Source: Hemiscyllium ocellatum (lineage: Eukaryota). From it: a DNA stretch of 64,000 bases. The stretch is taken from NCBI RefSeq assembly GCF_020745735.1, contig NC_083412.1, forward strand, positions 66,554,320 to 66,618,319, given 5' to 3'. Shown piece after piece: positions 8,188 to 34,859 of this stretch; the stretch's first letter is position 1, and each line of letters starts with the position of its first letter. The notes below the pieces were generated by a model, which worked only from the letters and a program-made list of their open reading frames with translations, was not told the DNA's origin and ran no database searches. A program made the position numbers and the translations under genes.

Positions 8188-8189
8188 AT

Positions 8190-8636: not shown

Positions 8637-8859
8637 GTGCCTTATCTATTTATCTGCTATTGTTTGCATGCACATTTTAGCTAGTACAAAAACAATTATA
8701 TATTTCCTCTATTATATTATATAGTTTTCATTCTTGTTGACTCAGCTCTTGGTTGAAACAATTATACACTGGTGTGAGTGCTTTTACCTTGCATAAGTAA
8801 TTATGATTGCAGAAGTAACACTACGTTACCTACATCCCAATTAGTGAGATAGTTGATTC

Positions 8860-9830: not shown

Positions 9831-10825
9831 TGTAGAATAGAGTAGAATATGCTTTTTTGTCACTTGTACTCCAATACAAAAGTGCAGGAGTACAATAAAA
9901 AGTATTTACAATGGCGTCATCTTAGTGTCAAATAACAAGTAGATTTAACAAGTTAAGTCCACTAATGACTTGCATTTATGGTTCAACTGCATTTGTGTGA
10001 CTATCTTGGAGAAATTAGCCCAATAAAGCAAACAAGATTGGGTGAAATTGACAAGTTGTTTATTACACTTGATATTGCTGGAAGAGAAATTGACTAGGCT
10101 GACACAGAACTGACAGTACAAGTAGATCAAGGGTTCTCTTCCTTGAGCTGAGGATGAAGGCAGGTTTTATAGGAATCTTGTACAATAAGTTTAATTAAAA
10201 TGGGGAAAGATGCAATGTATTTGGAAATCGGAAGAATGATCTGATTGTCGATACAATGTAATATCCTGACAGTATCAATGGGTTGTTGATAGGATCAGGA
10301 GATTCCAATTCTCTTTGCAGGGAGTCGAGAATGTCTCTTTTGAACCAGTAAGGTGCTTCCATTGTTCCTGTCCTGGGAATGAGTTGCCTGGTGGTGCCTC
10401 TCTGTCTGACCTGTTCTTTGTTTGGCTTTGGTATTGCTGTGTTATGAGACTGCCCTCGGGGTTTTGGAACAGCTGTGTTGGCCTGGTATTGTCAGTGTGT
10501 TTGGGAAATGTATTCCCTTGTCTGCGAGTGCTGTCTGGTTTCACTCGTCAGCCTGTTTGGTCACTGCTGAGGCATTATGGGAGCTTCTGCTAAAGTTTGG
10601 CCACATTTGATTTCCTACGTTCTGTGTGGATCTACTATGGGTAGGCAGGATGGCAGATATTTTCCCACACTACCATACTATGGTTTAAAAAGGTGTTACC
10701 TTCATAGTACTGACAAAATTAAGTAGATGATTTTAACCACAAATAACAATAATCATTCAGCTCAGTGCAGTTACAACAGCAGATATTCCGACACAATGTT
10801 GGTTTCTTGGTCTTTCCTCTTCATT

Positions 10826-10953
10826 TCAGTTTCTGTTTTTAAATGCAACAATCAGAATAATCATTAAGAGGATGATAAACCCAAATATTCCTGCAGCTGC
10901 GACCAATCCAATACGTTGCCGAGTCCTTGGAATTTCATTGTGAGTTCCTGGGT
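10826..10953 (-). CDS. HHLA2: HHLA2-like exon: stalk, TM and 4-aa tail
   Basis: Acceptor TTCAAATTTCAG|; DPGTHNEIPRTRQR-IGLVAAAGIFGFIILLMIILIVAF-KNRN*; too short for the ORF track. Confidence 0.8.
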
Positions 10954-13900
10954 CTGAAATTTGAACAAAGTGAACCTTATCAAACTTCATATAATTCACA
11001 CATAAAATATATTTGTAAATTTAAAACTAGACATAAACATAAACAGAGAATTTAAATAAAAATTCAACTGCAAATGTTGGAAATATAATGAAAATGGAAA
11101 CTAAGTTAGGTGAGGTGATCATTGCATTAATGATATAGAAGTAACTAAAGAACGGTTAACATATCCCACCACTAATATTGCTGCGTGGTGGAAATGTCAC
11201 TGGTGTAATAATTTAGACCTTGGGCTTATGCTCTGGGTTTATGGGTTCAAAACATGTTGTGGCAGCTGATGGAATTTAAATTAAGTTAATGAAAATGAAA
11301 TCTGGATTGAAAGCTAATGATGGTGCATTTAACTATTGTTGATTGTTGTAAAAACCTATCTAGTTCATTAATACCCCTTAGGAAAGGAAATCTGTTGTCC
11401 TTATTTGGTTTGGCCTAAATGTGCCTCCTGACCCACAATGATGTGGTTGGCTTTAATTGCCCTTTGATAGCCTAATAATCCACACTGTTTAAGAGCAATT
11501 AGAGATGGGCAACAGATACTGGTCATGGCAGAGACATCCATATCCCAAATAAAGAATAAAATAAGTCAATAAAGTTGGTAAAATGTTAGACCAAATAACC
11601 ATGGGAAGCAATACATGTGTAAAGTATATCTTTGAGTACTGTGATCAGTTCTGTCCTGTGAGGAACATTCACATACTAAAACAATGAAGACAAGACTTTG
11701 AGGGTGATTTCAAGACTGCTGATTTCCCTTTCCTTGATATTAATCCAGATGGCAATATTTGTTATCAGAATCAAAGAAACGATCTCTCTAACACAATTGA
11801 CTGAGAGATGATCTTAATACATGAAATGATATAAAAAAGATAATTCTGGAAAATAATTTCAAACTGAATTGTGAGAGTAAAACTAGGATAACGATGTGAC
11901 AATTGAGTAAAAAGCTCTTTTAGGGCAAAGATCAGAATATTCTTCAAATGCCCCTGTAGTGGGCAATGAATACATAGAATAGAAGATTGATATAATTATC
12001 ATCAATTATAAACCTTTAATTAAACAATATTTATCTGATTATATAATTACATAACACATGGACCTTAACATCAACAAGACGTTGTTTATAATGGTTTCCT
12101 GCAAATTGACAGCATATAATAAAATGCACGATAAAGCGCTTTGTGAAAATATAGGGCAGGAATTTAGTTGTCAAAATATTCTCACTAGGATATCTGGCCT
12201 TATCTGTATGTATCTCCTAGTTTACTGAACACACTATAATACTGTAAAAAGAGTATTTATAACAGCACTATGTGATTGTATATGTGTCCATCAGAGGGTG
12301 CTGATCAAAAGGTTATACTTTTCAATTTTAAAAATTCTTGATGAATGCTATATTTTGAGTCAAAAATATAAGAATAATGGTTACATATGAACATGTTATT
12401 AAATTTCTTCACCTTTATTTTAACAAAAGCGCTGAACCATTTTAAATGAATAGAGATAGTTTTGGCCAAGTTTTTGGTTGTTTGCCTTGCTCTCATATAT
12501 TTGAATTTTTTGCTCTTCCACTTATTTTTCATTTTATATTGTTCCTGTGAATCACTTCGGAATGTTTTACTAAGCTAAATACAGGTTTTTTTAAAAAGAA
12601 GTTTCTTTATTGCCTGTATGACAAATTTTACCCCTATATATTTCATTGGTTTAAGAATATGTTAACTCTTTAGAGTCCAGATTGAGGATTAAATATTTTC
12701 AGTCTTAAATATGGACAACCTTACTATGACACCATGTTCAAAACTAAATTTAAAGTATAAAGATAAAATCTAAGCTTTGAAGTACTTTCACATTCAATTG
12801 TGAATATTGGTGGACAATTAAACAATTAACTGGAAGAGGAGGCAACTCCACAAATATCCCCACCATCACTGGATAGGGAAGCCCAGCAACATCAGTGCTA
12901 AAGACAAAGCTTGTATGCATCCTCAGCTAGACGTGCCAAATGGAAGATCCATCTCAGCTTTCTCCTCAAGTCCCTAGCATCACAGATGTCAGTCCAGCCA
13001 ATCTGATGATCTTCCACATGATATCAAGAAGAGGCTGAAGGCACTGGGTACTGCAAAGGTTATGGCCCTAATAATGTTCCACCATTGGACTGAAAACTTT
13101 GCTTCAGATTTGCTGTACCAGTGGCCAAGCTCTTCCATTATGGACACAAAACTGGCATCTACCCGACACTGTAGAAAATTGTCCAGGTGTATCCTGTCTA
13201 CAAATAATAGGGCAACTCCAACCCAGCCAATTACCATCCTTTCAGTTTACTCTCAATCATCACCAAAGTGAAGGAAGGGGTCATTGACAGTGCTGTCAAG
13301 CAGCACTTGACCAGCAACAACCTGCCCACTCATGCTTAGTGTGGGTTCCAGCAGGGCCACACAATTCATGACCTCAGAACAGCTTTGGTCCAAACATGGA
13401 CTAAAGAGATGAATTCCAGACGTGAGGTGAGAGTGTCTGCCCTTGGCATCAAGACAGCATTTGACTCAGTGCGGTATGAGAGAGTGGTAGAAAACTAGAA
13501 TCAACGGGATTCTCCGCTAGCTGGAATCAATCCAAGTCAAAAGAAAACTGTGGTTGCAAATTGACCATCACAGTCTCAGGACATTACTGCAGGAATTACT
13601 CATGGCTGTGTCTTAGGCCCAGCCAGATCTTTTCTCAATAACATTCACTTTATCATAACATAGAAGTTGAGATGAGCACTGATGATTGCACAATGTTCAG
13701 CACTATTATCAATTCCACAGATACTCAAGCAATCTGCACATGGACCTGGACAACATCACAGGTTTGGATGATAAGTGGCAAGGAACATTCATGCTACACA
13801 AGTGCTACTTTTAACATCCTGGGGGGATAAACTGGTCCGACAATGCAAGTATTTGGTGACAAAAGCAGATCACAGGCTAAGAAATCTGGGGCAGTTCATG

Positions 13901-16900
13901 CCCCTGCTTATCTCCCCAGTGCTTGCCTACCATCTACAAAGCAATACAGTCTACTTGCTTGCGTGTGTCCAACTCCAACAACACTCAGGAAGCTCAATAC
14001 CATCTAAGACAAAGCAACTTGCTCAAGAGTCACCCATTCACCGCAGTTGCCTACCACCTACAAGAGGCAATTCACCTAGGCTGCATCAACAGCACTTTCC
14101 AAATCTGCAACCTCAGCTACTGAGAAGGACATGGCCAGCAGATGCATGGGAACACCATAAACTGCAGCTTCCACTCCAAATAACTCACCCATTCTAACTT
14201 GGAACTATGAGACAGAGTAAAAGAAAGAGATGGACAACTTAATGGTATGCTGTAGAGGCAAGAATCTCTCCTCAAAGTCAGCAAAATGAAGGAGATAGAC
14301 ATTGACTTCAAAAAAGAGACAAGATTAGAGTGGTGCTGGAAATGCTCAGCAGATCAGGCAGCATCTGAGGAGCAGGAAAATCGATGTTGCGGGCAGGAGC
14401 CCTTAGGAAACTCCTGCTCGAAACGTCGATTTTCCTGTTCCTCCGATACTGCCTGACCTACTGAGCATTTCCAGCACCACTCTAATCTTGATTCTAATCT
14501 CTAGCATCTGCAGTCCTCACTTTCACCTATCGATTTCAGGAAGTGGAGTGTAAGACACACCTGTGACTGTATCAGTGATGCTGAGATGGAGGTAGTCGAG
14601 AGCTTCAAGTTCCTACAAGTAAATATCATCAATGGTTTATTCTAATCAATCCATGTCAATGCTACAGTGAAGGCAGCACATCAATGTCTTTACATCCTTA
14701 AAAGCTGAAGGAAATTTGGTATGTCCACAATGATTTTTATCAATTTTTATAAATGCACCATAGAAGGCATCTATCCAGATGCATCAAAGCTTGATTTGGC
14801 AATTGCTCTGCCAGGACTGAAAAACTATTCCAGAGAGTTGTGAACACAGCCAAATCCATCATGAAAACCAGCCTTCCTTCTATTGACTCCATCTACATTT
14901 CCCGCTGCCTCGGAAAGCAACCAACATAGTCAAAAACCCATCCCACCCTCATTATATCAGACAGAGATACAAACATTTGAAAACAGCACCCATAGATTTA
15001 AGAACAGCGCCTTATCTGTTGTTATCACACTTATGAATGGACCCCTTATATATTAGAGTTGACCTTTCTCTGCACCGTCTCTGCAGCTCTAACACTATAT
15101 CTGCATTCTGTTCTGTTACCCTGATGTATTTATGTAAAGTATGATTGGTCTGATTAGCACACAAAACAGTACTTTTCACTGTACCTTTGTTCATACGACA
15201 ATAATAATTCAAATCAACAACCACATTGAGGTCTTACTTTTTTTGGCTAAATGTCAGATTTGTCCAGTCTCACAGGGTTTCTGTCGATGGGGTCCAGTGA
15301 GATGTCTTGCTGTATCTTATTAAAGTTACCTCATTAACTGTCTACCCTGGCCTAGTGTTATCCCACTCACCTAATTCTAGCCCAATTCAACCACCTGCAG
15401 CAGCGGATATCTGCTGCAAGTCCAGCATCTTTGACACCATACCATTCTTAAAAGGCTGCTGTGCACCCAGACAGGCATTGGTCATCATGCCTTGCCTCTT
15501 ACCGGCAAGTAATATCACAGCAGCTACAAAGCCATGCTACTCAAAGGGAAGCCATGGCCAGTGATATTACCACTGGACTACTAATCCAGAAACTTAGATA
15601 AGGGTTTTGGGGATCCGGATTCAAATCCTGACATGACAGGTGGTGAAATTTGAACTAATTTAAAAGAATTTGGGATTAAGTGTCTAATGATGACTATGAA
15701 ACCACTGTTAATTGTTGAGGAAACCTCCTTTAGGAAAGGAAACTACCATCCTTATCTGGTCTGGTCTACATGTGATTCCAGACCGACAGTGATGGGCAGT
15801 TAGGTATGGGCAATTAATGCTGAGTTATCCACTAATGCCCACATCCCGTGAGTGAATAAAACAAGTTTCCCTCACCCATAAGATCCCATTCTCTCATCCT
15901 GGTGTAATTTGACCAGCAGGCAATTTTGTTTTAATTGCCTTTATCTATGTTTAGTCACCTTACCCTGCCATCAGCACCCATTGTCCACCCACATCTTGTC
16001 ATTATCCAACAGGAGAACATCACATACAGAAACCAGTTGAATAAATCCAAAGTGATCTTTAATGTGCAAAAGCGAACATAAACAAAATGAACGGAGGCTG
16101 CTGGTCATCCCCACAATGCAAACCAAATGGAGTTGATGACTAACAAATTCCATGATGGTCTGCTGCATCTAGCTCTCATTTCCTGAAACTGAGTGACAGT
16201 CAGGCCCTGTCTGTCTTGTAGTGCCTGAAACAACTTAACTGTATCATGCACAAGGACAGCTTCCTCCTCCCCAGTGTCCTTATCCTTCTCCTAAGAAGAC
16301 TGCTCCCATACTCTCAGTTCCATATCATTCAATCGTATGGAGCATTGCACACCAGGAGGTGTGAGACAATCTTTCTGGACTATCCCAAAGGACCCTTTGC
16401 CCAGACCACTCCAAGTAGCAGAACCACGTCTTTAGCAGCCCCTATCGTCTGCTCTACCATTGCCCTGGTCAAACCATGGATAACATTTTCTCTGTGCTTT
16501 TCTTCATTTGGGGGCCATACAATGCTGTCAAGAACAATGATCACAGTGAGTAGCTCTTGTTCCCCAGTAATCTGCCTTGTAAGGCTGCTGGATGCCCAAG
16601 TGCAACAGGCCCCTGAGAGTGCTCCATGATGTAGGAGATATGGCAGCTGCCAGGATGGTACACCTCCAGGAAATGGTGGTGGTAGTCTCAGAGTCACCAG
16701 AACCTCAATGGGATGGTTACCCTTCCTGTTGATAAATTTCTCAGTGTTGTGATATGGCCATCTCAGTGTCATGTGCGAATAGTCAATGGCACCCTGCACC
16801 TGGAGGGGGGCAGGTCTGTTCCTGAATCCTACTGCCTGGGCTGCAGCACTGACCTCAGCAATGGAAAACAAAATGTACCTTGCACAGATGATATTGGTCT

Positions 16901-19900
16901 GTCCTGATACATTTGTGGGAACATGACTAAGAGATTCTACACAGCTACCTATTGCTCCCAGAAGGTTTAATGCAGCTGCTACATTCACAGTCACAATGAG
17001 AGGATGATCCTTTATTTCTGTAGCACTTGTCCCACTCCAACATCTGTCATCATTCCATCACAGTGTTTTGGGACAGAGGGAGTCTGCATTGACACTGCGT
17101 TTTGTTCATCCCAAGGAAGTGAAATTGGGGGGTGAGAAACTTGGGAGCTTCTCTTTAGCACTCTAAGTCTTTGGCACTTTGAGAGTCCCTTTGACTGTGA
17201 CCTATCCCTGAGTGGGGTGCTCCTCACCCTCCATTGGGACCTGCTTCTGCTCCTGGACTTGTCGGTGGCCTTGGTCTTGTTGCATTTGTTTTCACTTTTT
17301 TTAGGAAGGCAGCCACAGAGATCAACATTCCATCAGCACTGAGCACATGCCATTTGATGGAAATGACTAAAATAGGGAACATAAGAAACAAAGCAGTTTC
17401 TGCATAGCCTGCAGATGAGAACTGCACACACTCCTCCACACAGTGAGACATGCTACACCCTGATAACAAGGGCAATGTCTCCATCATTCTTTCTGCTTTA
17501 GCCTCAAAATAAGCATCAACTTGAAAAAGGTAATGCACTAACTGAGTAACCAATACATCACATCGAAAGGCAAGTGCTTTGATATTGTGTCAAAACTTTT
17601 CAGCTTATACTTATCAGGACATTTTACAAGAATACTAATTAAAGGGAAGAACCAACATTAATATTTGTGAGAGGAGAGTGCTGATTTTTTGACACATGGT
17701 CTCTGATTTATAGAGATGTTGCCATGGAGTATGAACCAATTAATGACAATGAACTTGCTTTGTTTAAATTTTGAACCAGTCAGATTTAAACTTTAATCAA
17801 GTTATTGCCCTGAGAAATGAGCCAGTCAAAACTGTCAACTCTGTAAGTTGAAACAGAGATGGTGAGTGTGCATGTTCTTTCTACAGGTAGTTCTCCCATA
17901 ATGCCATGGTTGCGTTCTAGCGAAACCTTGCTTAATAGAAAATCACTTAATATAAATAATGGGACATATGGGGTTGGGACAGACCAGCAAACAAAAATGC
18001 TCACAATAGCTCAAAAATCACCCAAAAGTCTAACACAAAGTGTGGCACATCCTTAATGAAGATTTAATTCATATTTATCAATGAAATAAAAGTAAATTTA
18101 ACACAGTACATTTAAAAGTAGTGTTAATGCAGGGACAGAAGGTCATCATGGTGCATAAGATAAACTCCGTCATCCCTATTAAGTGAGCTATATTATATGT
18201 TCTCTCCTTACGTTCAAAACTCTTTATAACAGCTAGCCTCTCTTCCAGTGTTTCAGCCTTTCTTTTGTGATCAGCATCTGCAATTTTATCACCAAGATGC
18301 TTCTTGCTAACATTCTTGTCACTGTGCCCCTCAATGATTTTATAGAAAGAGATAATCTAGGAGTAGTGTACCTTTCACATGTGTACATTTCAATGTAACT
18401 CTCTCAGAAAGCTGCTCTGTCAGCAGCTGACATCAGTGCATGTGCAGAATAGCACAAAGATCAGCACTGACATTGGCGCATGCGCAGAATGAAGCACATG
18501 AAAAGATCACCATTGGAATCATGCTATTGCAAACAGAGGTATGTATTCTTGAAAATACCATCCCTTAATTCCTCAGTGAAGTTATAAGCAAATCACGCTG
18601 CCAGAATGCACATTAGCTAAAGATGCCAATAGTCCTTTATTACTAAAGAGATTGAGTTTATAAGCAGGCAAGTTATGCTGCAACTGCATAGCATGATGGT
18701 GAGGCCACACCTGGAGTACTGCACCCAGTTTTGGTCCCCTTACTTGAGAAAAGATGTACCAGCACTAGAGGGAGTGCAAAGAAGGTTCACTAGATTGATT
18801 CCAGGGTTGAGAGGGTTGGTTTATGAGGAGAGACTGAGGAGACTGGGATTATATTCATTGGAATTTAGAAGAAATGAGGGGGGAATCTTATCAAAACATA
18901 TCAAATTATGAAGGGAATAGATAAGATAGATGTAGAGAGGGTGTTTCCACTGGCGGATGAAACTGGGACAAGAAGGCACAGCCTCAAAATTAAGTGAAGC
19001 AGATTTAGGACTGAATTGAGAAGGAACTTCTTCACTCAAAGGGTTGTGAATCTGTGGAATTCCCTGATTAGTGAAGTAGTTGAAACTATTTCAGTAAATT
19101 TTCCTAAAACTAAGATAGTTTTTTTTAACAATAAAGGAATTAAGGGTTAGGGTGAAAGGTCAGATAAGTGGAGCTGAGGCCATGAAAAGACCAGCCATAA
19201 TCTTATTGAATGGTGGAGCAAGATCGAGGGGCCAGATGGCGTACTCCTGCTCCGGGTTCCTATGTTCTTACGTTCACCCTCATGTATCAGTATCTCTATA
19301 ACATCTTGCAGCCTTGTAAAATTCCTTCCATCTTCCTCATTCCTCTGATACTGGCCTCTTGTTCATCTCCTTCCCCATTCCATTAGAAACAAATTTCTGG
19401 AATTTCTTAAATCCTTCTCTTTATTGATTGTCCACTTATTCTTTCAGGCCTTTCTTAAAATCCTCAATTTAGACCAAACGACTTGTCACTTCTTCTTTAG
19501 TTTGGCACTTGTTGCCATTTGAAGTGGGAGTTTTGCATTTTTCTTGTTAAATATTTGTTATTATTGAATCATGAAGTCTGCACTGTCAAGTCAACTGAAA
19601 GTTATTTGTAAGGGATGAAAGTTTGTTCATTGTTGCAATAATGGATGTGCAACCCAGCCTTCTGAAAATTGATCTTAATTTTGTTCTCGCTTTAAGAAAT
19701 ATGCATGTAAAAGAAAGGGATCTTGTTACCAACTATCATGTTTAAATCATTTTTCCAGTAGAATTTCCCCACAAATTAAATTGAAAATATCACTCCATTC
19801 ATTCATCTGTCTGAACATATTGTTTAATTTTCATTGTATCTAGTTTAATTTTTTTTTGGTTTTACATCCTGTCCAATAATTATATTTTACATTATAATAG

Positions 19901-22900
19901 CACCTGGCAGTAGATGTTGTTTGGCCTGTTTGTCTGGTATTGTGATCCAATATTACATGAGCTAAAATTGCACGAAAATCATGTTTAAAGAATCTGCCAG
20001 GGCACTAGCTGTAAATTTAATATGCAACGATATACAAAGCACTACATTCTCTCCAATGGAAGTCAGATTGGAGGTCTCCTTTTATTTTCGACCCAACATC
20101 TGTCAATGCTGCTTCATTTTTCTCTTTCCTCTATATATACTTTGGGGACTTAATATTCAGTTTGGAGGTTGCTCAGGAGATAACGAAATAGTTTTGCTTC
20201 TGAGTTCATTTATCTCTTACTATGAATGTGACAGCTCTCATTAAAAATAGATTTAGACAGTAAGTGAACAATCAGAGACAAGTCCAAGATGGAGATTCAG
20301 ATACTGTGAGTTGGTGACTGGTCTCGAAGGCCTTGCACCTTTTATGAATTGCCAGAAGGATTGGGAGACCTACAGTTCTTTGACCCTTTCTCAATGTAAT
20401 GCTTTGCCCAATCAGAAATTATTTGACAACTAATCAGCACCCTTCTCAGTTGTAATATAAACAGTTATGATTGTTTAAAGTTTGGCATCCTTACATTTGT
20501 CCTAATTAGCACAAGGTGAAAACAAGAGATGGTGACATTTAACACATGCTTCTCTTCTGAGCAATATTCAGATATATTTGTCATCTAATTCAAACCTAAT
20601 TCAGGATTATATAAATATCATAAGATGGAGGCAAGTAATGATGAAGGCTTGGAAACCAAATATTAGCAAAAATAATTCTAACAATTATATTCATTTCATA
20701 CAAACAAGTAAAAAAATCCATTCAGGCAGAAGTGAGTACTGCAGATGTTGGGGATTAGAGGAGTGATGAAGGGCTTTTGCCCGAAACGTTGGTTTTCCTG
20801 TTCCTCAGATGCTGCCTGACCTGCTGTGTTTTTCCCATCTTGAAAAAAACCCATTCAGTCTGGTTCCTTGCAAAGATCCAAGAAATTACCCCTCTTCCAT
20901 TTCCTCTTCTTCAAATCACTCAACAACACTAGTACAGTGACAACTTAAAGATCTGAAAGGCAAGAATGTTTAATTTGGCCTTCCATCCTTTTTAGGAGGG
21001 AATTGGGTTCAAATGTAGCACAGACATAAGAAGAAGGACTTTCTCAATCTGTCACTTGTAATGCTCATATTCAAAATGAATTTAGTAAATTCAAAATGTT
21101 AGTAATCTCAACACAGTTCCAGGAATGTCCAACTCTGTGGCTAACAACTGTTAGTACTATGATCCAGAATACTAAAAGAAGCAATAAGAAATTGCAATTT
21201 TTTTTTAACATGGAGCTTGCATATTACAAAACACAGGTGAGTTAATTGAATCAAATATTATAATATAATTCGATCTGTAACCATAAAATATTGATAGCTT
21301 ACCTATCCTTAGAATGTAGGTGAACACTTTCATTGCATCTTTGGTGCTGATTTCACAGGTATATTCTCCCTCATTAAGTGGAGTTACATTTTGCAGTTCA
21401 AGGGATGAAAGTTTCTCAATATTTGACATTCCAGATTGGGTTGTCAAACAGTTTGTATGTACATTGCCATATTGCTGCGTTGACTCACAAATCTCTAATG
21501 AAGGAGATGTTTCTGTTTTTCTAAATCTCCATTTAATTATGACATTTTGATCATCATTGATGAAATCATCACAAGTAATTACAATAGTTTCACTCTCGGT
21601 TCTGTTCAATCTGCCTTAAAAAGCAAACAAACATAATGTCATTTTACATCTTACCATTTTTTATACTCCAAAAATTGAAGAATTTGTTATGTAATGGTTC
21701 AGAATAATTGTGCCATAACATTAGGGCAGCACTTTCCTGCACATTGCAGATGCAATTACAATGATGCAAGAGTTGCAGTCTTGTATCTGCATACTGTACT
21801 GTTAAAAAAAAATTCAAACAAGTGGTATAGCAAACAATTTACAAGTTAGAAGGGAAAAGGTAACAAGGAAATAGCACAGTTCCAGCAACAGTAATTGGTT
21901 CCCTTAGTGATAAAGCCGGAAGCCTTCCATTAAAGGCTGCAATTCTTGCGTCTCTATGATTCCAACAGAGTGTGGGCCAAGGTATATGGGCAACAGTTCC
22001 TAACATCTTTTTTTAAATGTATTCTTTCATGGGATCTTGGTAGCACTAACAAGATCAGCATTTGTTACCTATTCTTAATTGCACTTGAACTGAGTGACTG
22101 GCTGTGTCATTTCAAAGTCAACCACATTGCTGTGCATCTGGAGTCGGTTAGGTAAGACCAGATAAGGATGTCAGATTTTCTTCCCTATTGGGAACCATTT
22201 GATTATAGCAACAGCAAGTGATTATAGTTTCATCGTCTACATTCCTAAGAACTGGCTTTCAATTCCAGATTGATTGATTAAATTTAAATTCCACCAACTA
22301 CCATGGTGATGTTTGAACCTGTGTCCCAGAACATTTACCTGGCCTCAGGATTATTAGGACCAATCACATCGTCACTGCACCACTGTCGTCTCAAGGTCAC
22401 ACCTTGTTGTAAAACATTCAGGAAACAAAGAAAGGAGGGATAAATGCCAAATAAGGCAAAATGGCTGATCTTACCCATGCAAAATGCACTACGTCTGACT
22501 CAAACAAAGCTGTTATGTTTGGCTTTTGAGAATTTAGATGTTGTGTGTGTTCGTTGTGCATTGATATTGGAACATGCTCAAATCACGTTAGGAAGTAAAT
22601 TTACTGCTATGGGCCTTAAAGGCTTCCAGGAACTTAAAGGTACACTAATCCTTTGAAAATGCATTAAAATGTTTGATAGCAATGTAAGGAATATGAGAGT
22701 CCTCTGCATCAATGTTGATAATATTATGTCTTGCTATAGGATGTGAATCCATTGGAGAATTGGAGGACGTACCATTTATTTCTATATCTGCATGGTGTGC
22801 AGAGTATTACAGGAAGTGCTAAGACAACAATGACAAGAGGAAGTGAAGACATTACACAGGTATTCCAGCCACTTTATATTCTTTGACACCTCAAGTTCAG

Positions 22901-25900
22901 AATGCAGCTTAGACAAGGTAACAAGAGTTGAAGTATTAAAGTGCACAGCCCAGCTGTAGTATTTATGTACTACTTAAAAAAAAACGACACTACTAGTGTT
23001 ACAAACCTAATAAAAATAGCAGAAAACACTGAAATAACACAGTAATTATTCAACATCTGTGAAGAGACTAGGCATTTTAAGTGTGACAAATGCTTTCACG
23101 CTCCAGTTGGAGAATTTTAGTCTAGATCTCCTGTTGGAAAACTGATTGAATCAAGTATCAACCACATTTTACATCTCGTCAGTCAATGGAGAGTATTGTT
23201 GGCTTGAATCTATGTCCAGATGATCCTATTGGTTTTCCATTGGGCAAGGAATGATAAAGTTGCTAACTGTATATTTAGTTTTGTTCCTATCTAACACGCA
23301 ACTAGAATTGTTGATGAAGCACAAAGGGATGGGACTAAAGTCATGAACCATGGATCTCAGTTTCTTATTGTGTAACAGTCTGAAATTAAGTGTATAGATG
23401 GCGCAATGCAGAAGATCATTGGTTACGGTTAGTTAAGGTTTTTCCACTGTTATTCAATCCACCATTTCTCTGAAATGAAAAAATTTGCATCTTGGATTGG
23501 TCTGCTTTTAAACTAAGGCTTTGTTAGTCCCACTCCCCTTTACCATCAACTCAGTTGGTCATCTTTACCAGCCTTATGCTACCAGGAATCTGGATGTCAG
23601 CATGGCTAAGTAATTGCAACTCTTTCTTCACACTGTATACTTTATAATAGTAAAATACAGAGTGTTGCTTCTCTCTTGGTCTCCTTCCCAGACTCTTAAG
23701 TTGGAAATAAAATTAAAAACTTTAATGCTTTACTCTCAATTTAAAGTATCATTTTAACTTGATTTGAGCAAACTAAAATCACTTTGCTACATCTCCATGA
23801 ACTGACTTCGTATTCATGGATAACATAATGCAAAGAACAACAGGAAGGTTCTTCAAACTTTACCCCAGGCATATAGAAAGAAAAGTATAGCACCATCTTC
23901 ACTTATGGTAACAAAAAGAAAGGTATGAACCACAGAAAATAATGCAATTATAGGTGTTGTTTAATCATCAATGTTTATCCAATTCAAATACTACCACAAT
24001 TCTGTAATATTGTATATGTGTGCAAAATAAAATTTGTGAGTATTTTTAAGGATTATTTAATAATTGTTACCTTTCATTTTCCAGGTTGCAGTCCATGACT
24101 GCTGCATTCGTTCATTCGTGATATTACATTTGTAGGTTATGTCTGATGTTGGATTAATCTTCAACATGCTCTGAACATTGAAAAGACCATCTGGATCAGT
24201 AGCCACTTCCAAACTTGCATCTTGAGTTAAGTCATTCTCGTTATTATCTTGCCATGTTACTAACGGTTTTGGATAACCACCAAATGAAGAACAGGCAATA
24301 TAGGTAACATTGGTTGCATGGGATAGCATATTTGGGTTTTCTAATGTTACATTCTTCCAATGAGCTGAAAAGAAATAGTAATTAATTGATTCCATATTAA
24401 TACAACTTAAATTACATTTATTACCATTCATCATATTGTAATGGGAGTGAAAATCTGGACAAATGTAAAATGCTCTGCTGATTCATTATCGCACACCATA
24501 AATTGTATCACAAAGTTAAAATACCCCCAGTTCTGTGAAAGTACTTCTGTACAAAGAAATAATTGTATGCAAAATTGATATAAAGTACTATATTAACTTG
24601 CAAAAGCAAAATATCTTTCAAGTCATTTCATAGAGTGCAAGAACAACAGTCCTGTGAGCAACATTAGAACTCACGGAATGGAAGAGCCAATGGCAACATG
24701 GATTTAAAATTGGCTGACTGACAGGAAACAAAGTTTAGTGGTGATCACTTGTTTTTAGACACAGGAAATATTTATAGTGGCATTCCCCATAGATCAATGT
24801 TAGGACCCCAGCTGTTCTTGATATGTATTAATAAACCATGCCTTGACATGTAGGGCATAACTTCAAAATTTGCAGATGATACAACAGTTGGAAATATTGT
24901 GATCTCTGAGGTGGGTAGTGTAGATGGGCTATTGGAATGGACAGATAAGTGACAGATGAAATTTATTACAGAGAAGGGTGAAGTGATTCAGTTTGGGAGG
25001 AAGAGTGAAAAGAGACAGCATTAAATAAAAGGCACAGTTCTAAAGAAGCAGAGGAAAGGAGGTGAATCAAATCATTAAAGGTGACAGGAGAGATTGAGAG
25101 TATGGTTAATAATGCATGCAGCACCCAGTGCTTTATCCATGGTGGCATTGAATAGAAAAGCAAACAAGTTATTTTAGATTCGTATTAAATGCTCAAGTCG
25201 TCTCAATTGGAGTCCAGCTTGTTACATCATACTTAGGAAGGATGTAAGTCATTAAACTGTATAGAGAAAAATTCCCAGGAATGGAGGCAGGGATGAGGAA
25301 GTTAAGTTACATAGAAAAAAATGGAGTCATTAGCGCAGTTCCCTTGGGAGAATAGAAGATGGAGAAGAAATTTGTTAGAGTTATTGAAATCATGATGAGT
25401 CTTAACAGAGTAGATACAGAGAATTTGCACCAGTTAGTAGAAGGATTGAGAATCAGAAGGCATAGAATCAGTGGTTAGCACTGCTGCCTCACAATACCAG
25501 GGATCCGGGTTCAATTCCCGCCTCAAGCAACTGTCTGTGTGGAGTTTGCACAATCTCCCAGGGTGGGTTTTCTCCGGGTGCTCCAGTTTCTTCCCACAGT
25601 CCAAAGATCTGCAGGTTAGGTGAACTGGTCATGCTAAATTGCCCGTAGTGTTAGGTGCATTAGTCAGAGGGAAATGGGTCTGGGTGGGTTACTCTTCGAA
25701 GGGTCGGTGTGGACTTGTTGGGCCGAAGGGCCTGTTTCCACACTGTAGGGAATCTAATCTAATCTAAAAAATAAAGCAATAGTGATAAGAAGAAAACCTT
25801 TTTCGCAAAGTGAATGATTAAGATATGAAATGCACTGTCTGAGGACGTGGTGGAGGTGGGGTCAAATAAGGATTTCAAGCATGAACTAGATCGTTATCTG

Positions 25901-28900: not shown

Positions 28901-31900
28901 AAGTGTCACATTAAAGTTTGTTATGAAATATAAATGGTCATTGGGTAGGCAGTAATACATAAGCATGAATAGAAAATTAGCGGTTAACAAGAAGCAGAGA
29001 TTATGCATAAATGAGTCTTTCTCAAGTTGTAAGATGTAATGAGTGGTGTGCCAGAGGGATCAGTACTTCAATTACTTGTAAGTTATATAAATAACTTGAA
29101 TGAAAGGAGGATAATTAAGTTTATTAATAACAGGAAGCTGGATGGAATGTAAATTGTAAGAAAATATAAGCATGTCACAAAAAAGGTGTAGGTTAATTGA
29201 ATGAGTGACAATCCACCAATTGGATTGTAATATATGGAAATGTAAAATTCTCAATTTTGGCAGGAAGAATAAAAAAGAAATATATTACTTCAATTATGAG
29301 AAATTACAAAGCTCTGAGATGCAGAGATCTGGATGTCTTAGCACATGCATCACAGAAGATTGGTATGCAGGTACAGCAAGTAATCAGAGAAGATAACAAA
29401 TGTTCTAAGTTATTATGATTGATATTGATATGAAACTAGGGATATTATGCTTCAGTTGTGCAGGGTACTGATGGGGCAACATCTGGAGTACACTGTACAA
29501 TATTGGTCCCCTTTATAAGTAAGAATCTAAATACATTGGAGCAGTAGAGGGAAAGTGTACCAGCATAATAACTTGAATGGTGGCTGATCTTTTGAGGAAA
29601 GATTAGGCAGGCTATGCTTGTACCTTCAGGAGTTTCAAAGTGTCACAGGGCAGCCTGATTAAAATAAAAGGTCGTAAAATCTTGACAGGGCACCTGTGGA
29701 TAGAATGCTTTCTTTTATGTGAGAATCTAGAATTAGGAGACACTATTTGAAACTAAGGCGCTGCCTATTTAAAACGCAGATTAGATGAACATTAGATGAA
29801 CATTTTTCTCTTGGAAGGTTGTAAGTCTTTGTAACTCACTATCTAAAAAGAGGTAGAAGCAGAAACTTTGAAAAATTTGAATGCGGAGGGAGATAGATTC
29901 TTGGTAAGCAAAGGGTTGAAAGGTACAGCAGTTCAGGCAGCATCCGAGGAGCAGTAAAATCGACGTTTCGGGCAAAAGCCCTTCATTCTTGATGGGTTTC
30001 GATTTTACTGCTCCTCGGATGCTGCTTGAACTGCTGTGCTTTTCCAGCACCACTAATCCAGAATCTGATTTCCAGCATCTGCAGTCATTGTTTTTAACCA
30101 AGGGTTGAAAGATTATCAGGGATAGGAATGTGGATTTGAGGTTACAGCCAGATCAGCTATGATTCTATTAAATAGCAGAGCAGGCTCGAGGGGCCAAATG
30201 GCCTACTCCACGTTTCTGTGTATTTACACATATGTTTGGACAAATAAAACCCACACCTTCCATAGCCATCAAATCTTGGAGTGGAACTCACAGTCTAAAC
30301 TTCTGTCTCAGAAGCAAGGAAATGCCATTGCACAGCAAACACTCTGGATAGTGCTGTACTTTCACAGTGCATTAAAGTTTATAACCTTAAAAGGATTGTG
30401 AAATCTCAGGCTTAGTAAATTTGCTGACTGTTTGTTAAAAATGAAATTGATTTCCTAACTTTTTTTCTTAGTTTGTAGAGCAATAGATTAATTCTCCTCT
30501 CAGGACTCAATAGCTTGTCTACCCCTTTGGTGGAACAATGTTGATTAACTCCAGAAAAAAAAAATTAAAAGAATGAATACAGCCATAGCTCAAATAAATA
30601 ACATTAACGCCAGTTTTAATATAAAAAAAAGGAGGCTTTCAATGATGGAATTTGAGGTGAGACTTAGTTATAGAAGCTTCTTGCCCCTTTCTCTTTCTAC
30701 TAAAAAATTGGGAGATGACTCTGTTTGGATGATTAGTTTTGAATGAGCTAAAACTTTATTCTTTCTGTTCAGTTGTGACAAAACCATTTGATTTATTTGA
30801 ACTTCACCATTATTTCCAATTCATTTACTGCCCAGCCTCAATGTCAAGAACTTGCACTCTCTTCCATAAAACAAATGTGAAAAATGGTGCCTACAAGGCT
30901 AACCCCTTAACACTCACATTTCTTATCAAGTTTTTATTTTATAATTTCTCAGGATCCTTATCAGTCTCTTAGGCAGTGCATCCTAAAGTAAGACCCATAA
31001 ATCAGCATAGCCATGGCCATAAATGGAACTTATACATTCACATTAAAGTTTATTAATGGCACATATCTTTTGAGATATTTCCAATTTGATCAGTACTGAA
31101 CTGAACTATGACACCTATCAAATGAGGATATCGTTGAGATATGGATCTCAGGTGGATATTTTTGTTGTGCAATGACAGAGGGTTAATGAATAATCTTGCT
31201 CTAAAGGATACTTTAGAAAAGAGTAAACTTCATATGATGGAATTTTAGATTAAGAGTGAGAGCGAAGTAGTTCAATCAGAAATAGGTTCATCAATCGATT
31301 CAAAGGGAAATATGAAGATATATTGGGAGTCCAAAACTAGGCAGAGTTTTAAGGTGAGAGGGGTCAGATTTAAAAGAGATCGAAGGAACAACGTTTTCAT
31401 GCAGAGGGTGGTGTATCTATAGAATAAGCTGCCAGAAGAAGTGATGGAGGCTGGTACAATTACAACATTTAAAAGGCATCTGGATGGGTAAATGAATAGG
31501 AAGGGTTTAGAGGGATATTGGCCCAAATGCTGGCAGTTGGGACAAGATTAATTTAGGATAACTGGTTCCCATGGAAGAGTTGGACTGAAGGGTCTGTTTC
31601 CATGCTATATAGTTCTATGACTATATGGGAGGAGAATAATAGGGAATAAGGAAAACAAAACTAAACAAATCCTTTGAATATTTTTAAGGCAGTAATCAAT
31701 AAATTCTTGGTAAGCAAGGGGTGAAAGGTTATCACGGATAGGAATGTGGATTTGAGCTTACAATGAGATCAGCTATGATCTTATTAAATAGCAGAGCAGG
31801 CTTGAGAAACCAAATGGGTTACTCCATGTTCGTATGTATTTACATATATATTTGGGCAAATTAAATACACAATCTTACAATTTTTTAACTAGGTATTAGT

Positions 31901-34859
31901 TTCTTTGAGTTTCATGGATTGTTTCTCTTTAAAAGGCCTAGCAAGTTTAATAGGTGCATCGTATCAAATGCACCTCGCTAATTGTATGATCCACTCCTAT
32001 GTTGCTCCACTTGTCTGAATCTAGCACCATTCTATCACTCGCAATACTTAGAACAACTCATTGCTGCAAGGATATCATGCAACGGACTGACATTCTGGAG
32101 CCAGCACCATCTTTAAAAGAACTTTGAGTACCAGCCAAGTACCATAGGTCAAGAGTTGTCTTGCATGGGTTCCTGATATTTGCCTCAATATGGTAGATAA
32201 GGAAAACTGGTGTCAAGAGTGTGGTGCTGGAAAAACACAGCAAGCCAGGCAGCTGGAAAGGGACAAGGGAAACTGGTGCCCCACTTTACAGGCTATGCAA
32301 GTTATCCTACTTTATAAGGAAAAAAAGAGACAGAATATTTCTTAAATAATAAGAGACTAGAAGAGTGAGCTTTAAAGACACTTGCGTATCCTTGCTCATG
32401 AGTCTCCGAAAGTCACCATGCAAGTACATGAACAATTAACAAGACAAGTAATATGTTAGCTGAAAATGTGTTGCTGGTTAAAGCACAGCAGGTCAGGCAG
32501 CATCCAAGGAATAGGAAATTCGACATTTCGGGCATAAGCCCTTCATCAGGATGCCCTAAACGTTGAATTTCCTGTTCCTTGGATGCTGCCTAACCTGCTG
32601 TGCTTTAACCAGCAACACATTTTCAGCTGTGATCTCCAGCATCTGCAGACCTCATTTTTTTACCCGAAGTAATATGTTACCTTTCATTACATGAGGCTTT
32701 GAGTAGAGAAGTAAAATTGTTTTGCTACAAATATAGAAGGGCTTGGTGAAATCATGGTATATTGTGTCATTTTGTGAATATTGGTTTTATTAGCTACTTG
32801 CCAGAGAGTGAAACAGAAGTTAAACCATTTAAACCTGGGATTAGAAGGATTGTCCTGCGAGGAAAGATTAAATGGACTGGGCTTACATTCTCTGCAGGTT
32901 TGAAGCACGAGAAATTCTCATTCAAATATAGAAAGTTATTACAGGAATAAACAGAGTAGGTGATGGAAAACCATTTCCCCTGGCTGTGGAGTCTGCAACC
33001 AGGGGACATAATCTCAGAATATGGGCTGGCCATTTAGGACTGAGAGGTGGAGGATTATTTTCATTCAGAAGACGGTGAATCTTTGGAATTTTCTCCCTCA
33101 CTGGCTGTGGAGGCTCAATCATTGAATATATAGAATTGTGGATGTTAAACATTATGAAGTACAGGGATGGCAACTGAAAGTTGTATTAAAGTAGAAGATA
33201 AGCCAAAACCTCAGTGGATGGTGGAGTCAGTTTATGAAGCAGAATATCCAGTTCCTATTTGTTATGTCTTATACAAATGAAGTTGAGGTAAAGATCAGTG
33301 CTGGTCTAATTGAATAGTGTTGACTGATGTCCTCCCATTTCCATCTTTTTAAGTAAGTATTATTTAACAGTTTAATTTTGACATTATACTTTAAATTTAC
33401 TTCTTTAAATTCTTGTTAAGTGTTAAACATTTTCACATTGTGTTAGTTCCAAGTTGCAACTCAATTCATAGAAGACATTTTCAATGGAAAATTACATATT
33501 TCTGACCAGCCACTTGTAGCGAGACATCAGTTTCTTGTTTCCCTCCAGGCGTACTGACATAGCATTGGTACTCTCCTTCGTCATTCTTGTTAAGTTTTGA
33601 AAGCTGAAGGGATGCATTTCCCCTCATTATCTCATTCTTAAAAAGCTTTGTTCTTCCTCTGTAGTCTTCATCTTGGTTCGATAGCTGATCGCTTTCTCGA
33701 TAAAAGCTGTGAATTACAATGGTGCCAGAGTGCAAAATGCGCATCCAGTGAAGAACTACTCCACCTATAGGTGATGGTTGGAATTTACATGGCAAAATGA
33801 CTTCCTTGGAAATGATAGCCATGATGCTCCCATCTAAAAGGAAAGAGATCAAGATTTGGGTTTTTTTTGGTGAAAAGAATATGCTTGAAATTTATGATCC
33901 AAATTTCAAAAACGGATCATGTCAATTAACCATGAAGTGAATGTTCACCGGCAGTGAGCATCACAATTTAGAGGGTGCTATTGGAAAAGATTAAGATAAC
34001 AAAGGTTCTATGCCTAAACCTAGAATTATGGCATGTAAAATTGATTTTTATTATTCCAGGAAAGCATAGATAACCTCTGGTTTCCTAACTTTACTGCAAA
34101 ATTATTTTCCCAAACTTCTTTCCTCTATTTCTCCGCTTCTATATCAAAAAAAAATGCAAAGCTCTTGGATTTCTTTGTTATTAAAATTGAGATCATTCAA
34201 TTAATTGCCTAATTAATGGCTCCCTGAAACCATTTACATCTCCTCCCTGCTAAACCCTATTTAGGACATATTGTCTTGCCTGATATAGTGTGAAATGATA
34301 AGAAATCGACATATGAATGCCCTTTTGGAATAGACAGCCTGTCAGTTCCATTTAATGAAAACTAATCTTGACAAAGGTGTAGCTTCTTTTCTTTTGAAAT
34401 AAGGGTGTGACAAAATGCTAATATCTACCCTTCTAATTCCATTTTCCATAACCTTAATATTCTTCTTTTTTAAAACACGATCTAGTTCTCTATTAAAGAA
34501 TTTTATCAGAGTTGTTATTCTAACACCCCTCCAGATGTGCTAGTAACTAAAGAACAATGGATCCATGATTTTGAAACATACACTTCCCACCCTCGGTGAA
34601 TATTCAGTAAGAATTGTGGTCAAGCAGTGCTGATAATTCTAATTTTAATGCATTGTGTAAAAAGATTCTGCTATTTTCCACTTTATTACAGTAATTTCTC
34701 CTTTATTTTTATGTGTTTATAGTTAATTGAACCCTCAGTAATTTTATAGCATAAGGCAATATGTAAATATAACATATCAGAAAAAAGGTTGTCACCTGTA
34801 GTCACAGCCTGCAGTTGCAAAATTCCAAAAACATAAAAACAGACTATTCCACATAACAT
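10826..34859 (-). CDS. HHLA2: B7-family IgV-IgC-IgV type I membrane protein, HHLA2/B7-H7-like; join(34859-34796,33833-33507,24364-24071,21614-21303,10953-10826), 374 aa
   Basis: Five exons with GT/AG sites, all phase 1, total 1125 nt = 375 codons with an uninterrupted frame; V-C-V order is characteristic of HHLA2 among B7 genes. Structure is high confidence; orthology is inferred. Confidence 0.78.
11180..11560 (+). mobile_element. Second SINE family (tRNA-like head, tail shared with CR1/L2-type LINE)
   Basis: GGTGGAAATGTCACTGG...GGGTTCAAA head; central GGAAAGGAAATCTG..CCTTA..TGGTTTGGCCTA; tail CAATTAGAGATGGGCAAC...CATCCATATCCC..AATAAA; similar at 15555, 22040 and 35270. Confidence 0.7.
12800..14190 (+). 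mobile_element. Decayed CR1/L2-group LINE (distinct from HER1 type)
   Basis: RT remnants ...ALGTAK.MA...; QTWTKEMNSRREVRVSALGIKTAFD; C-terminal ...RRTWPADAWEHHKLQ. Confidence 0.8.
14205..15195 (+). mobile_element. Rex1/Babar LINE 3' fragment, split by a PLE mini-element
   Basis: KMKE..IDF, VVESFKFL, AAHQCLY, FQRVVNTAKSI, DSIYISRCLGK, RFKNS remnants. Confidence 0.8.
14311..14528 (+). mobile_element. Fold-back PLE mini-element, family A
   Basis: Inverted arms (AGAGTGGTGCTGGAAATGCTCAGCAG / CTACTGAGCATTTCCAGCACCACTCT), 3' tail extension, degenerate TSD ATTGACTTCA / ATCGATTTCA. Confidence 0.8.
15555..15865 (+). mobile_element. Second SINE family copy
   Basis: Same head, centre and tail as 11180-11560; ends CCCACATCCCGTGAGTGAATAAAA. 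Confidence 0.7.
15870..17560 (-). mobile_element. PIF/Harbinger DNA transposon remnant (HARBI1-like DDE transposase)
   Basis: VNVAAALNLL, VQGAIDYSH, FINRKG, TRAMVEQTIG motifs with frameshifts; TIRs not resolved. Confidence 0.82.
18620..19270 (+). mobile_element. CR1 LINE 3' fragment
   Basis: [35 protein letters not shown]; tail GGGCCAGATGGCGTACTCCTGCTCC..CCTATGTT. Confidence 0.9.
20726..20842 (+). mobile_element. PLE mini-element, family A
   Basis: GTGATGAAGGGCTTTTGCCCGAAACGTT; flanked by AAAAAAA(T/C)CCATTCAG duplication (20710-20725 / 20843-20858). Confidence 0.75.
21303..21614 (-). CDS. HHLA2: HHLA2-like exon: second IgV domain
   Basis: Acceptor TTTGCTTTTTAAG|, donor G|GTAAGC, 312 nt phase 1-1; ITC...IKW...LELQNVTPLNEGEYTCEIS. 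Confidence 0.88.
22040..22385 (-). mobile_element. Second SINE family copy
   Basis: Reverse complement of the 11180-11560 family. Confidence 0.65.
24071..24364 (-). CDS. HHLA2: HHLA2-like exon: IgC domain
   Basis: Acceptor TATTTCTTTTCAG|, donor G|GTAACA, 294 nt phase 1-1; IACSSFGGYPKPLVTW...DPDGLFNVQSML...YKCNITN (B7 C-domain signature GYP.P.V.W). Confidence 0.92.
24660..26000 (+). mobile_element. Decayed CR1 LINE, interrupted by a V-SINE
   Basis: SGIPHRSMLGPQLFLI, KFADDT remnants; CR1 3' tail at about 25960-26000. Confidence 0.75.
25470..25766 (+). mobile_element. HE1-like V-SINE
   Basis: B-box GGGTTCAATTCC, V-domain, (AATCT)n tail. Confidence 0.9.
26480..26735 (-). mobile_element. Degenerate HE1-like V-SINE
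   Basis: Reverse-strand V-domain CTGTGGGAGGAAACCCATGCAGACATGGGGAGA. Confidence 0.75.
26745..27435 (-). mobile_element. CR1 LINE 3' fragment
   Basis: Antisense MRRIFFTRKVVN...SLSMFKAEI and CR1 tail. Confidence 0.8.
27436..27590 (+). mobile_element. PLE terminal fragment, hammerhead family C
   Basis: AGCA-CTGAGGA-TGTCACCTAGACAGGGGGC-AAAA-CGTC-TGC (27511-27551); GCA/TGC stem I; G12 mutated. Confidence 0.65.
28150..28291 (-). mobile_element. Fold-back PLE mini-element, family A, 13-bp TSD
   Basis: TSD CATTAAGCAATGA at 28137-28149 and 28292-28304; centre palindrome GAATCGATTC; ribozyme core deleted. Confidence 0.88.
29923..30099 (+). mobile_element. Fold-back PLE mini-element, family A, 12-bp TSD
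   Basis: TSD AAGGGTTGAAAG at 29911-29922 and 30100-30111; inserted in a CR1 tail. Confidence 0.88.
31130..31840 (+). mobile_element. CR1 fragments and tails
   Basis: RFKRDRRNNVFMQRVV-type 3' end, GGGTCTGTTTCCATGCT tail, second CR1 tail at about 31690-31840. Confidence 0.75.
32459..32666 (+). mobile_element. Fold-back PLE mini-element, family A, 13-bp TSD; near-intact hammerhead core on minus strand (32518-32552)
   Basis: TSD AAGTAATATGTTA at 32446-32458 and 32667-32679; minus strand CTGATGA-A-GGGC-TTAT-GCCC-GAAA-T-GTC. Confidence 0.88.
33507..33833 (-). CDS. HHLA2: HHLA2-like exon: first IgV domain
   Basis: Acceptor TTTCCTTTTAG|, donor G|GTCAGA, 327 nt phase 1-1; VILPCKF...LHW...DQLSNQDEDYRGRTKLF....GNASLQL...DEGEYQCYV (B7 V-domain signature). 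Confidence 0.93.
34796..34859 (-). CDS. HHLA2: HHLA2-like exon: signal peptide
   Basis: ACAATG start, MLCGIVCFYVFGILQLQAVTT, donor ACAG|GTGACA phase 1; an in-frame upstream ATG at 34913 is an alternative start. Confidence 0.78.

What the first reader, a model, noticed from the sequence alone, without database searches (positions are those of the whole stretch)
10826..34859. Complete V-C-V B7 gene (HHLA2/B7-H7-like) assembled from exons the ORF track does not join
Seen: five exons give 374 aa with all introns phase 1, B7 V and C signatures, several N-glycosylation sequons (NAS, NVT x3, NIT, NRT) and a TM. Established: HHLA2 is the B7 member with V-C-V order and is the ligand of TMIGD2 and KIR3DL3 in humans. 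Inference: a cartilaginous-fish version whose receptors cannot be KIRs, which bears on the origin of this checkpoint axis.
Basis: partly seen in the sequence, partly recalled or inferred. Interest (0 to 1): 0.75.

Follow-up and report, generated by a model that had tools for sequence, protein, structure and literature searches.

The report
Shark orthologue of HHLA2 (B7-H7)
The five exons are real and encode a complete cartilaginous-fish copy of the immune-checkpoint ligand HHLA2 (B7-H7), but this gene is already annotated in a skate and many other vertebrates, so this is a good annotation and not a discovery.

Summary
Observation confirmed. Five minus-strand exons (34859-34796, 33833-33507, 24364-24071, 21614-21303, 10953-10826) have canonical AG/GT sites and only phase-1 introns. 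They give a 374-aa protein: signal peptide, IgV, IgC, IgV, TM, four-residue tail. No fourth Ig exon exists anywhere in the 64 kb.

Interpretation supported.
- The protein is 57% identical to a basking-shark protein and 45% to a thorny-skate protein named HHLA2.
- It is 30-33% identical over about 340 aa to tetrapod HHLA2. Domain 1 alone is 43-49% identical.
- The third domain matches the tetrapod HHLA2 third domain better than any first domain. In a tree, first and third domains split with 100/100 support.
- A model of the basking-shark orthologue finds human HHLA2 first (E 2.6e-31, 363 residues aligned), ahead of CD276 and VTCN1.
- That orthologue lies next to CIP2A, a gene listed in the same short chromosome intervals as HHLA2 in cattle and horse.

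The early CD276 hits arose because the PDB copy holds no HHLA2 chain.

Not new in kind: HHLA2/B7H7 is described in teleosts, and CD28H (TMIGD2), the likely ancestral receptor, in Chondrichthyes (PMC11599192).

Not done: an outgroup-rooted tree with true CD276 and VTCN1 sequences.

The parts
34796..34859 (-). Exon 1: start codon and signal peptide (MLCGIVCFYVFGILQLQAVTT), 64 nt, ends in phase 1
   Evidence: ATG at 34859 with A at -3, donor GT at 34795-34794. Same N-terminus as the basking-shark protein P0001 (MLCRIVWFCVFG...). tblastx match to skate exon 1.
33507..33833 (-). Exon 2: IgV1 domain (D1), 327 nt, phase 1-1. Presumed receptor-binding domain.
   Evidence: Pfam V-set 46 bits. HHLA2 D1 HMM E 7.5e-44. 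43-49% identical to tetrapod HHLA2 D1. AF2 pLDDT 96.8.
24071..24364 (-). Exon 3: IgC domain (D2), 294 nt, phase 1-1
   Evidence: Pfam C2-set_3 53 bits, C2-set_2, C1-set. HHLA2 D2 HMM E 8.9e-31. The end motif WTATWKMK is shared with tetrapod HHLA2 (WTAEWKME).
21303..21614 (-). Exon 4: IgV2 domain (D3), 312 nt, phase 1-1. Carries an extra Cys pair (EIC...NCL) shared by cartilaginous fishes.
   Evidence: Pfam ig/V-set 34 bits. HHLA2 D3 HMM E 1.4e-28. hhalign of cartilaginous D3 vs tetrapod D3 scores 77, against 35 to tetrapod D1. Falls in the D3 clade.
10826..10953 (-). Exon 5: stalk, transmembrane helix, four-residue tail KNRN and TGA stop
   Evidence: acceptor AG before 10953, TGA at 10828-10826. 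Cartilaginous orthologues also end up to about 10 residues after the TM. tblastx match to the last skate exon.

Best explanation
This is the HHLA2 (B7-H7) gene of a cartilaginous fish, most likely a shark. It is a five-exon, one-domain-per-exon B7-family gene encoding a type I membrane glycoprotein: signal peptide, IgV1, IgC, IgV2, TM and almost no cytoplasmic tail.

Shown here: the gene model, the domain order, its conservation across cartilaginous fishes, and its orthology to tetrapod HHLA2.

Inferred: it acts as a cell-surface ligand that presents IgV1 to a CD28-family receptor on lymphocytes. Candidates are CD28H/TMIGD2 or the CD28H-like paralogues reported in Chondrichthyes. With a four-residue tail, any signalling would go through the receptor-bearing cell, not through HHLA2 itself.
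For: Gene model. Pfam gives V-set, C2-set_3 and V-set in order.

Orthologues with the same V-C-V-TM layout and short tails:
- Cetorhinus maximus P0001, 57% identity over the full length.
- Scyliorhinus torazame P0026, 54%.
- Amblyraja radiata P0028, named HHLA2, 45%.
Sources. The skate locus has the same five exons in the same order.

A profile search gave full-length hits (83-96% coverage) named HHLA2 in frogs, turtles, crocodilians, birds and a marsupial.

Per-domain comparison:
- D1 is 43-49% identical and scores 83-91 bits against tetrapod HHLA2. It scores 66.8 bits against human VTCN1 IgV and 37 bits against a CD276 V domain.
- D3 to D3 by hhalign scores 77 (P 6e-14), against 35 for D3 to tetrapod D1.
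- In the ML tree the D1 and D3 clades split at 100/100. The window's domains fall inside the chondrichthyan clades (100/94 and 97/87).

Structure: the AF2 model of P0001 (pLDDT 85.5) searched with Foldseek against Swiss-Prot finds human HHLA2 first (E 2.6e-31, TM 0.71, 363 residues aligned). CD276 follows at 8.9e-24 and VTCN1 at 1e-19.

Synteny: CIP2A lies about 5 kb downstream of P0001, in convergent orientation. HHLA2, MYH15, CIP2A and DZIP3 are listed in the same short chromosome intervals in cattle and horse (PMC11927911, PMC8532986).

Function of the family: human HHLA2 is IgV1-IgC-IgV2 and binds TMIGD2 through IgV1 (PMC10173190). CD28H, CD28HL1 and CD28HL2 are reported in Chondrichthyes (PMC11599192).
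Against: - No bona fide CD276 or VTCN1 sequences could be fetched, so there is no outgroup-rooted tree.
- For D1 alone, Foldseek ranks VTCN1 (E 1e-12, 32-33% identity) level with human HHLA2 (E 2.3e-12, 38% identity).
- NCBI names the basking-shark orthologue 'VTCN1-like'.
- D2 scores slightly higher against human CD276 IgC (38 bits) than against tetrapod HHLA2 D2 (26-32 bits).
- D3 similarity to tetrapods is weak in pairwise terms (19-23% identity, 13-15 bits).
- Synteny was shown for the orthologue only. In this window an ERV fills the space downstream of the gene.
- Expression, splicing and receptor binding are untested.
- CD28H is reported as not found in the great white shark, so the receptor may differ between sharks.
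Confidence: 0.85

Rival explanations
1. It is a VTCN1 (B7-H4/B7x)-like gene, as NCBI names the basking-shark orthologue, and not HHLA2.
For: The best single-domain PDB hit of D1 is the VTCN1 IgV (66.8 bits). Foldseek on the D1 model ranks VTCN1 of mouse, rat and human first (E about 1e-12, TM 0.90). P0001 is named 'V-set domain-containing T-cell activation inhibitor 1-like'. VTCN1 and HHLA2 are each other's closest paralogues (PMC13262535).
Against: The Swiss-Prot VTCN1 entries are 282-283 aa and align to P0001 with lower scores than HHLA2; that VTCN1 has only a V and a C domain is established knowledge, not tested here. This gene has a third Ig exon that is homologous to the HHLA2 IgV2. D1 scores 83-91 bits against tetrapod HHLA2, higher than against VTCN1, and has its highest identity (38%) and TM (0.91) with human HHLA2. 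The full-length model hits HHLA2 at 2.6e-31 against VTCN1 at 1e-19. The orthologue's neighbour CIP2A matches the HHLA2 region.
Confidence: 0.06
2. It is a CD276 (B7-H3)-like gene with a VCVC or degenerate VCV layout.
For: CD276 is the top PDB sequence hit for D1 and D2 (E about 1e-21). Many teleost relatives are auto-named 'CD276 antigen-like'.
Against: The PDB copy has no HHLA2 chain, and a marsupial HHLA2 gives the same CD276-first ranking. No fourth IgC exon was found by tblastn, motif scan or HMM on six frames. D3 is not a copy of D1: they form separate clades at 100/100. In the 4Ig human CD276 chain the two V and the two C copies give nearly identical alignments and scores. Each CD276 V domain scores only 37 bits.
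Confidence: 0.03
3. It is a lineage-specific HHLA2 paralogue or an unexpressed gene, not the functional one-to-one orthologue.
For: Identity to other sharks is only 54-57%. CIP2A synteny could not be checked in this window. There are no expression data. An ERV lies directly downstream.
Against: All exons are open, with canonical splice sites, conserved Ig cysteines and tryptophans, and a stop at nearly the same place as in the skate. Searches found one cluster of chondrichthyan sequences only. Basking shark against catshark is itself only 63% identical, so 57% fits orthology in a more distant shark.
Confidence: 0.06

Closest known systems
Human HHLA2 (B7-H7, B7y; UniProt Q9UM44)
   Same: Signal, IgV1, IgC, IgV2, TM order. 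The orthologue's model aligns over 363 residues (TM 0.71, E 2.6e-31). The window's D1 is 38% identical with TM 0.91. The orthologue lies next to CIP2A.
   Different: 374 aa against 414 aa. The tail is only four residues. D3 has an extra Cys pair and an insertion shared by cartilaginous fishes; this stretch has low pLDDT in the model of P0001 (residues 269-290). D2 still matches the B7/butyrophilin IgC profile C2-set_3, which is absent from the Pfam lists of almost all tetrapod HHLA2 hits. KIR3DL3 is described in the literature for higher primates (reference title cited in PMC10173190), so that receptor is not expected here.
HHLA2 of Amblyraja radiata (P0028) and 'VTCN1-like' XP_078416700.1 of Cetorhinus maximus (P0001)
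   Same: Same five-exon layout, same domain order, short tails, the extra D3 cysteines, and 45% and 57% identity.
   Different: A different species. The gene here spans 24 kb against 10.3 kb in the skate and 17.9 kb in the basking shark, because of repeat-filled introns.
VTCN1 (B7-H4) and CD276 (B7-H3), the other members of B7 group III
   Same: D1 and D2 are clearly related: VTCN1 IgV 66.8 bits, CD276 V and C domains about 37-38 bits each. HHLA2, B7x and B7H3 form one B7 subgroup (PMC10173190).
   Different: Mouse and rat CD276 (316 aa) aligned to P0001 only through D1-D2 (residues 1-219). The 4Ig human CD276 chain shows V and C twice as near-identical copies, unlike the divergent membrane-proximal V here. 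That VTCN1 has just a V and a C domain is established knowledge.

Membership tests
B7 family (general) | Type I membrane protein with a signal peptide, N-terminal IgV and then B7/butyrophilin-type IgC, one domain per exon with phase-1 introns | tested here: met
   Exon lengths are 64, 327, 294, 312 and 128 nt. Pfam gives V-set and C2-set_3. The TM helix is in E5.
HHLA2 / B7-H7 | Ectodomain order IgV-IgC-IgV with no fourth Ig domain | tested here: met
   Pfam. The six-frame HMM scan finds only three Ig exons. Orthologue proteins go straight from D3 to the TM.
HHLA2 / B7-H7 | Full-length and D1 similarity highest to proteins established as HHLA2 | tested here: met
   30-33% identity over about 340 aa to tetrapod HHLA2. 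D1 is 43-49% identical and scores 83-91 bits, against 66.8 bits for VTCN1 and 37 bits for CD276. Caveat: Foldseek on D1 alone ties VTCN1 with HHLA2.
HHLA2 / B7-H7 | Third domain homologous to the HHLA2 IgV2, not a recent copy of D1 | tested here: met
   hhalign scores 77 against 35. The D1 and D3 clades separate at 100/100, and the window's D3 lies in the chondrichthyan D3 clade.
HHLA2 / B7-H7 | Conserved synteny with the HHLA2 region (IFT57, HHLA2, MYH15, CIP2A, DZIP3) | tested here: inconclusive
   Met for the basking-shark orthologue: CIP2A lies 5 kb downstream (mammalian gene lists). The window ends inside an ERV before any such neighbour, so it is not shown for this genome.
HHLA2 / B7-H7 | Monophyly with HHLA2 in a tree rooted with CD276, VTCN1 and other B7 members | not tested
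   Three homologue searches returned no bona fide CD276 or VTCN1 sequences. Only score comparisons were possible.
HHLA2 / B7-H7 | Binds CD28H/TMIGD2 through IgV1 | not testable with these tools
   Literature only: PMC10173190 and CD28H in Chondrichthyes, PMC11599192.
CD276 / B7-H3 | V-C, or tandemly duplicated V-C-V-C with near-identical repeats | tested here: not met
   No fourth IgC exon. D3 is highly divergent from D1.
VTCN1 / B7-H4 | Only two Ig domains (V-C) | tested here: not met
   A third Ig exon is spliced in frame and conserved in orthologues.

The most novel reading that the evidence does not exclude
In cartilaginous fishes HHLA2 may be a tail-less, pure ligand form with a lineage-specific disulfide-bonded insertion in IgV2. 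It may be genetically linked to its own receptor: an ITIM-bearing IgSF gene lies immediately upstream in the same orientation, with its last exon at 60995-61119. That would be an ancestral linked inhibitory receptor-ligand pair that predates the primate KIR3DL3 solution.
Probability: 0.07. Interest if true: 0.6.

Novelty: new member of a known kind. Interest (0 to 1): 0.22.

Why it matters
It gives a clean, complete gene model for HHLA2 in one more cartilaginous fish. It also shows that the automatic name 'VTCN1-like' given to the basking-shark orthologue is probably wrong. It confirms that the V-C-V layout, including the second V domain, predates the split of cartilaginous and bony vertebrates. 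That fits published evidence that CD28H is equally old. It opens no new question: HHLA2 in fishes and CD28H in Chondrichthyes are already in databases and in the literature.

Tried and rejected
- PDB sequence searches of the three domains first pointed to CD276 and VTCN1, with no HHLA2. I rejected this as evidence against HHLA2 because a bona fide marsupial HHLA2 gives the same ranking. The PDB copy therefore holds no HHLA2 chain.
- I looked for a fourth Ig exon or a tandem paralogue with tblastn, an Ig motif scan and family HMMs on six frames. None was found. A 13-bit D3 hit at 20758-20910 lies in a stretch whose words recur elsewhere in the window, and I dismissed it.
- The third homologue search, with D1-D2 of P0001, was meant to fetch CD276 and VTCN1 as outgroups. 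It returned only fish HHLA2-like proteins.
- tblastx of the skate locus against the window showed the colinear exons. Everything else it matched lay where reverse-transcriptase-like and other repeated ORFs occur, and no conserved flanking gene appeared.
- Rfam at gathering thresholds found nothing in the window.
- A direct-repeat search in 1-12500 found no LTR pair.
- Flajnik et al. 2012, which defined B7H7, is not held in the library.
Full report
**Gene model.** On the minus strand, five open segments join through canonical sites:
- E1 34859..34796: ATG with A at -3, donor GT.
- E2 33833..33507.
- E3 24364..24071.
- E4 21614..21303.
- E5 10953..10826, ending in TGA.

Exon lengths are 64, 327, 294, 312 and 128 nt, so every intron is phase 1. 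The spliced CDS of 1125 nt translates to 374 aa. The TM helix is followed by only KNRN.

**Domains and chance.** Pfam calls E2 V-set (46 bits), E3 C2-set_3/C2-set_2/C1-set (53 bits) and E4 ig/V-set (34 bits). HMMs built from the three HHLA2 domains were run against every stop-to-stop segment of all six frames. They hit only these three exons, in order (E 7.5e-44, 8.9e-31, 1.4e-28). tblastn and an Ig motif scan agree.

**Relatives.** A search of 1.84 billion representatives with D3 found a 367-aa protein (P0001) with the same layout. It is XP_078416700.1 of Cetorhinus maximus, auto-named 'VTCN1-like'. The window protein compares as follows:
- 57% identical to P0001 over its full length.
- 54% to a Scyliorhinus torazame hypothetical protein.
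- 30-33% over about 340 residues to proteins named HHLA2 in a marsupial, crocodilians, turtles and birds.

A profile search returned full-length hits named HHLA2 across amphibians, reptiles, birds and a marsupial. It also returned teleost 'hhla2b' genes and mis-named 'CD276-like' proteins. The skate locus shows the same exons in the same order. The source is therefore a cartilaginous fish, most likely a shark.

**The CD276 lead.** PDB sequence searches put CD276 and VTCN1 first for D1 and D2, and nothing B7-like for D3. A bona fide marsupial HHLA2 gives the same ranking.

**Domain-wise tests.**
- D1 is 43-49% identical to tetrapod HHLA2 D1. It scores 83-91 bits against them, compared with 66.8 bits for human VTCN1 IgV and 37 bits for a CD276 V domain.
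- D2 is 22-32% identical and shares the terminal W-x-x-x-W-K motif with tetrapod HHLA2.
- D3 is only 19-23% identical. Profile-profile comparison still gives cartilaginous D3 against tetrapod D3 a score of 77 (P 6e-14), against 35 for tetrapod D1.
- An ML tree of all D1 and D3 sequences splits them at 100/100. The window's domains fall inside the chondrichthyan clades.

The V-C-V order therefore predates the split of cartilaginous and bony vertebrates.

**Structure.** The AF2 model of P0001 (pLDDT 85.5) finds human HHLA2 first in Swiss-Prot: E 2.6e-31, TM 0.71, 363 residues aligned across all three domains and the TM. CD276 follows at 8.9e-24 and VTCN1 at 1e-19. The window's own D1 model (pLDDT 96.8) is statistically tied between VTCN1 (E 1e-12, 32-33% identity) and human HHLA2 (E 2.3e-12). 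HHLA2 has the highest identity (38%) and the highest TM (0.91). D1 alone cannot separate the two closest paralogues. The architecture and D3 do.

**Synteny.** In the basking shark, the next gene lies 5 kb downstream in convergent orientation and is CIP2A. In cattle and horse, HHLA2, MYH15, CIP2A and DZIP3 are listed in the same short chromosome intervals (PMC11927911, PMC8532986). In this window the corresponding space is filled by a decayed gamma-type ERV, so the neighbour is not seen here.

**Mechanism (inferred).** Human HHLA2 is IgV1-IgC-IgV2 and binds TMIGD2/CD28H through IgV1 (PMC10173190). CD28H, CD28HL1 and CD28HL2 are reported in Chondrichthyes, although CD28H was not found in the great white shark (PMC11599192). 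The likely role is a surface ligand for a CD28H-family receptor. The four-residue tail, like the tails of at most about 10 residues in other cartilaginous fishes, argues against signalling by HHLA2 itself.

**Novelty.** Low. HHLA2 is annotated in a skate, B7H7/HHLA2 is described in teleosts, and the antiquity of CD28H is published. Three details may be new:
- The basking-shark 'VTCN1-like' name is probably wrong.
- Cartilaginous fishes share an extra Cys pair and an insertion in D3.
- Shark and teleost D2 keeps the B7/butyrophilin IgC signature.

**Limits.** There is no outgroup-rooted tree, no synteny in this genome, and no expression or binding data.

**Earlier notes of the scan.** Four bear on this window:
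- s1-236486 (tail-less protein) agrees with what I found.
- s1-236450 (ITIM exon) adds context.
- s1-237832 (ERV downstream) adds context.
- s1-203515 (V-C1-TM gene beyond the window) adds context.

Noticed in passing
window 60995-61119 (minus strand): A terminal coding exon ends ...PPNDDNVVYSLLGQYPCDI followed by a stop. It carries an ITIM-like VxYxxL motif. It sits upstream of the HHLA2 gene in the same orientation. The rest of that gene lies beyond the window end.
   Followed up: partly
window about 1400-7900 (minus strand): A decayed gamma-type endogenous retrovirus lies directly downstream of the HHLA2 stop. It has Gag_p30 (6475-7155), reverse transcriptase (5039-5452) and RNase H (3964-4302) in separate broken ORFs. 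No LTR pair was found within 1-12500.
   Followed up: partly
window 21355-21573 (D3); P0001 residues 269-290: Cartilaginous-fish D3 carries an extra conserved Cys pair (EIC...NCL here) flanking an insertion that is absent from teleost and tetrapod HHLA2. AF2 gives that stretch pLDDT below 50.
   Followed up: partly
window 36892-39593 and 50221-51097: Reverse-transcriptase-like ORF debris on both strands upstream of the gene. Related fragments recur in its introns (for example 18675-18911) and dominate the tblastx matches to the skate locus.
   Followed up: no
protein P0001 (Cetorhinus maximus XP_078416700.1): The automatic name 'V-set domain-containing T-cell activation inhibitor 1-like' is probably wrong. 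The protein is V-C-V, best matches human HHLA2 in structure, and lies next to CIP2A.
   Followed up: yes
proteins P0029, P0077, P0099 (frog HHLA2 models): Several anuran HHLA2 models carry two D1-like V domains in tandem before the C domain. This is either a real V duplication or a merged gene model.
   Followed up: no
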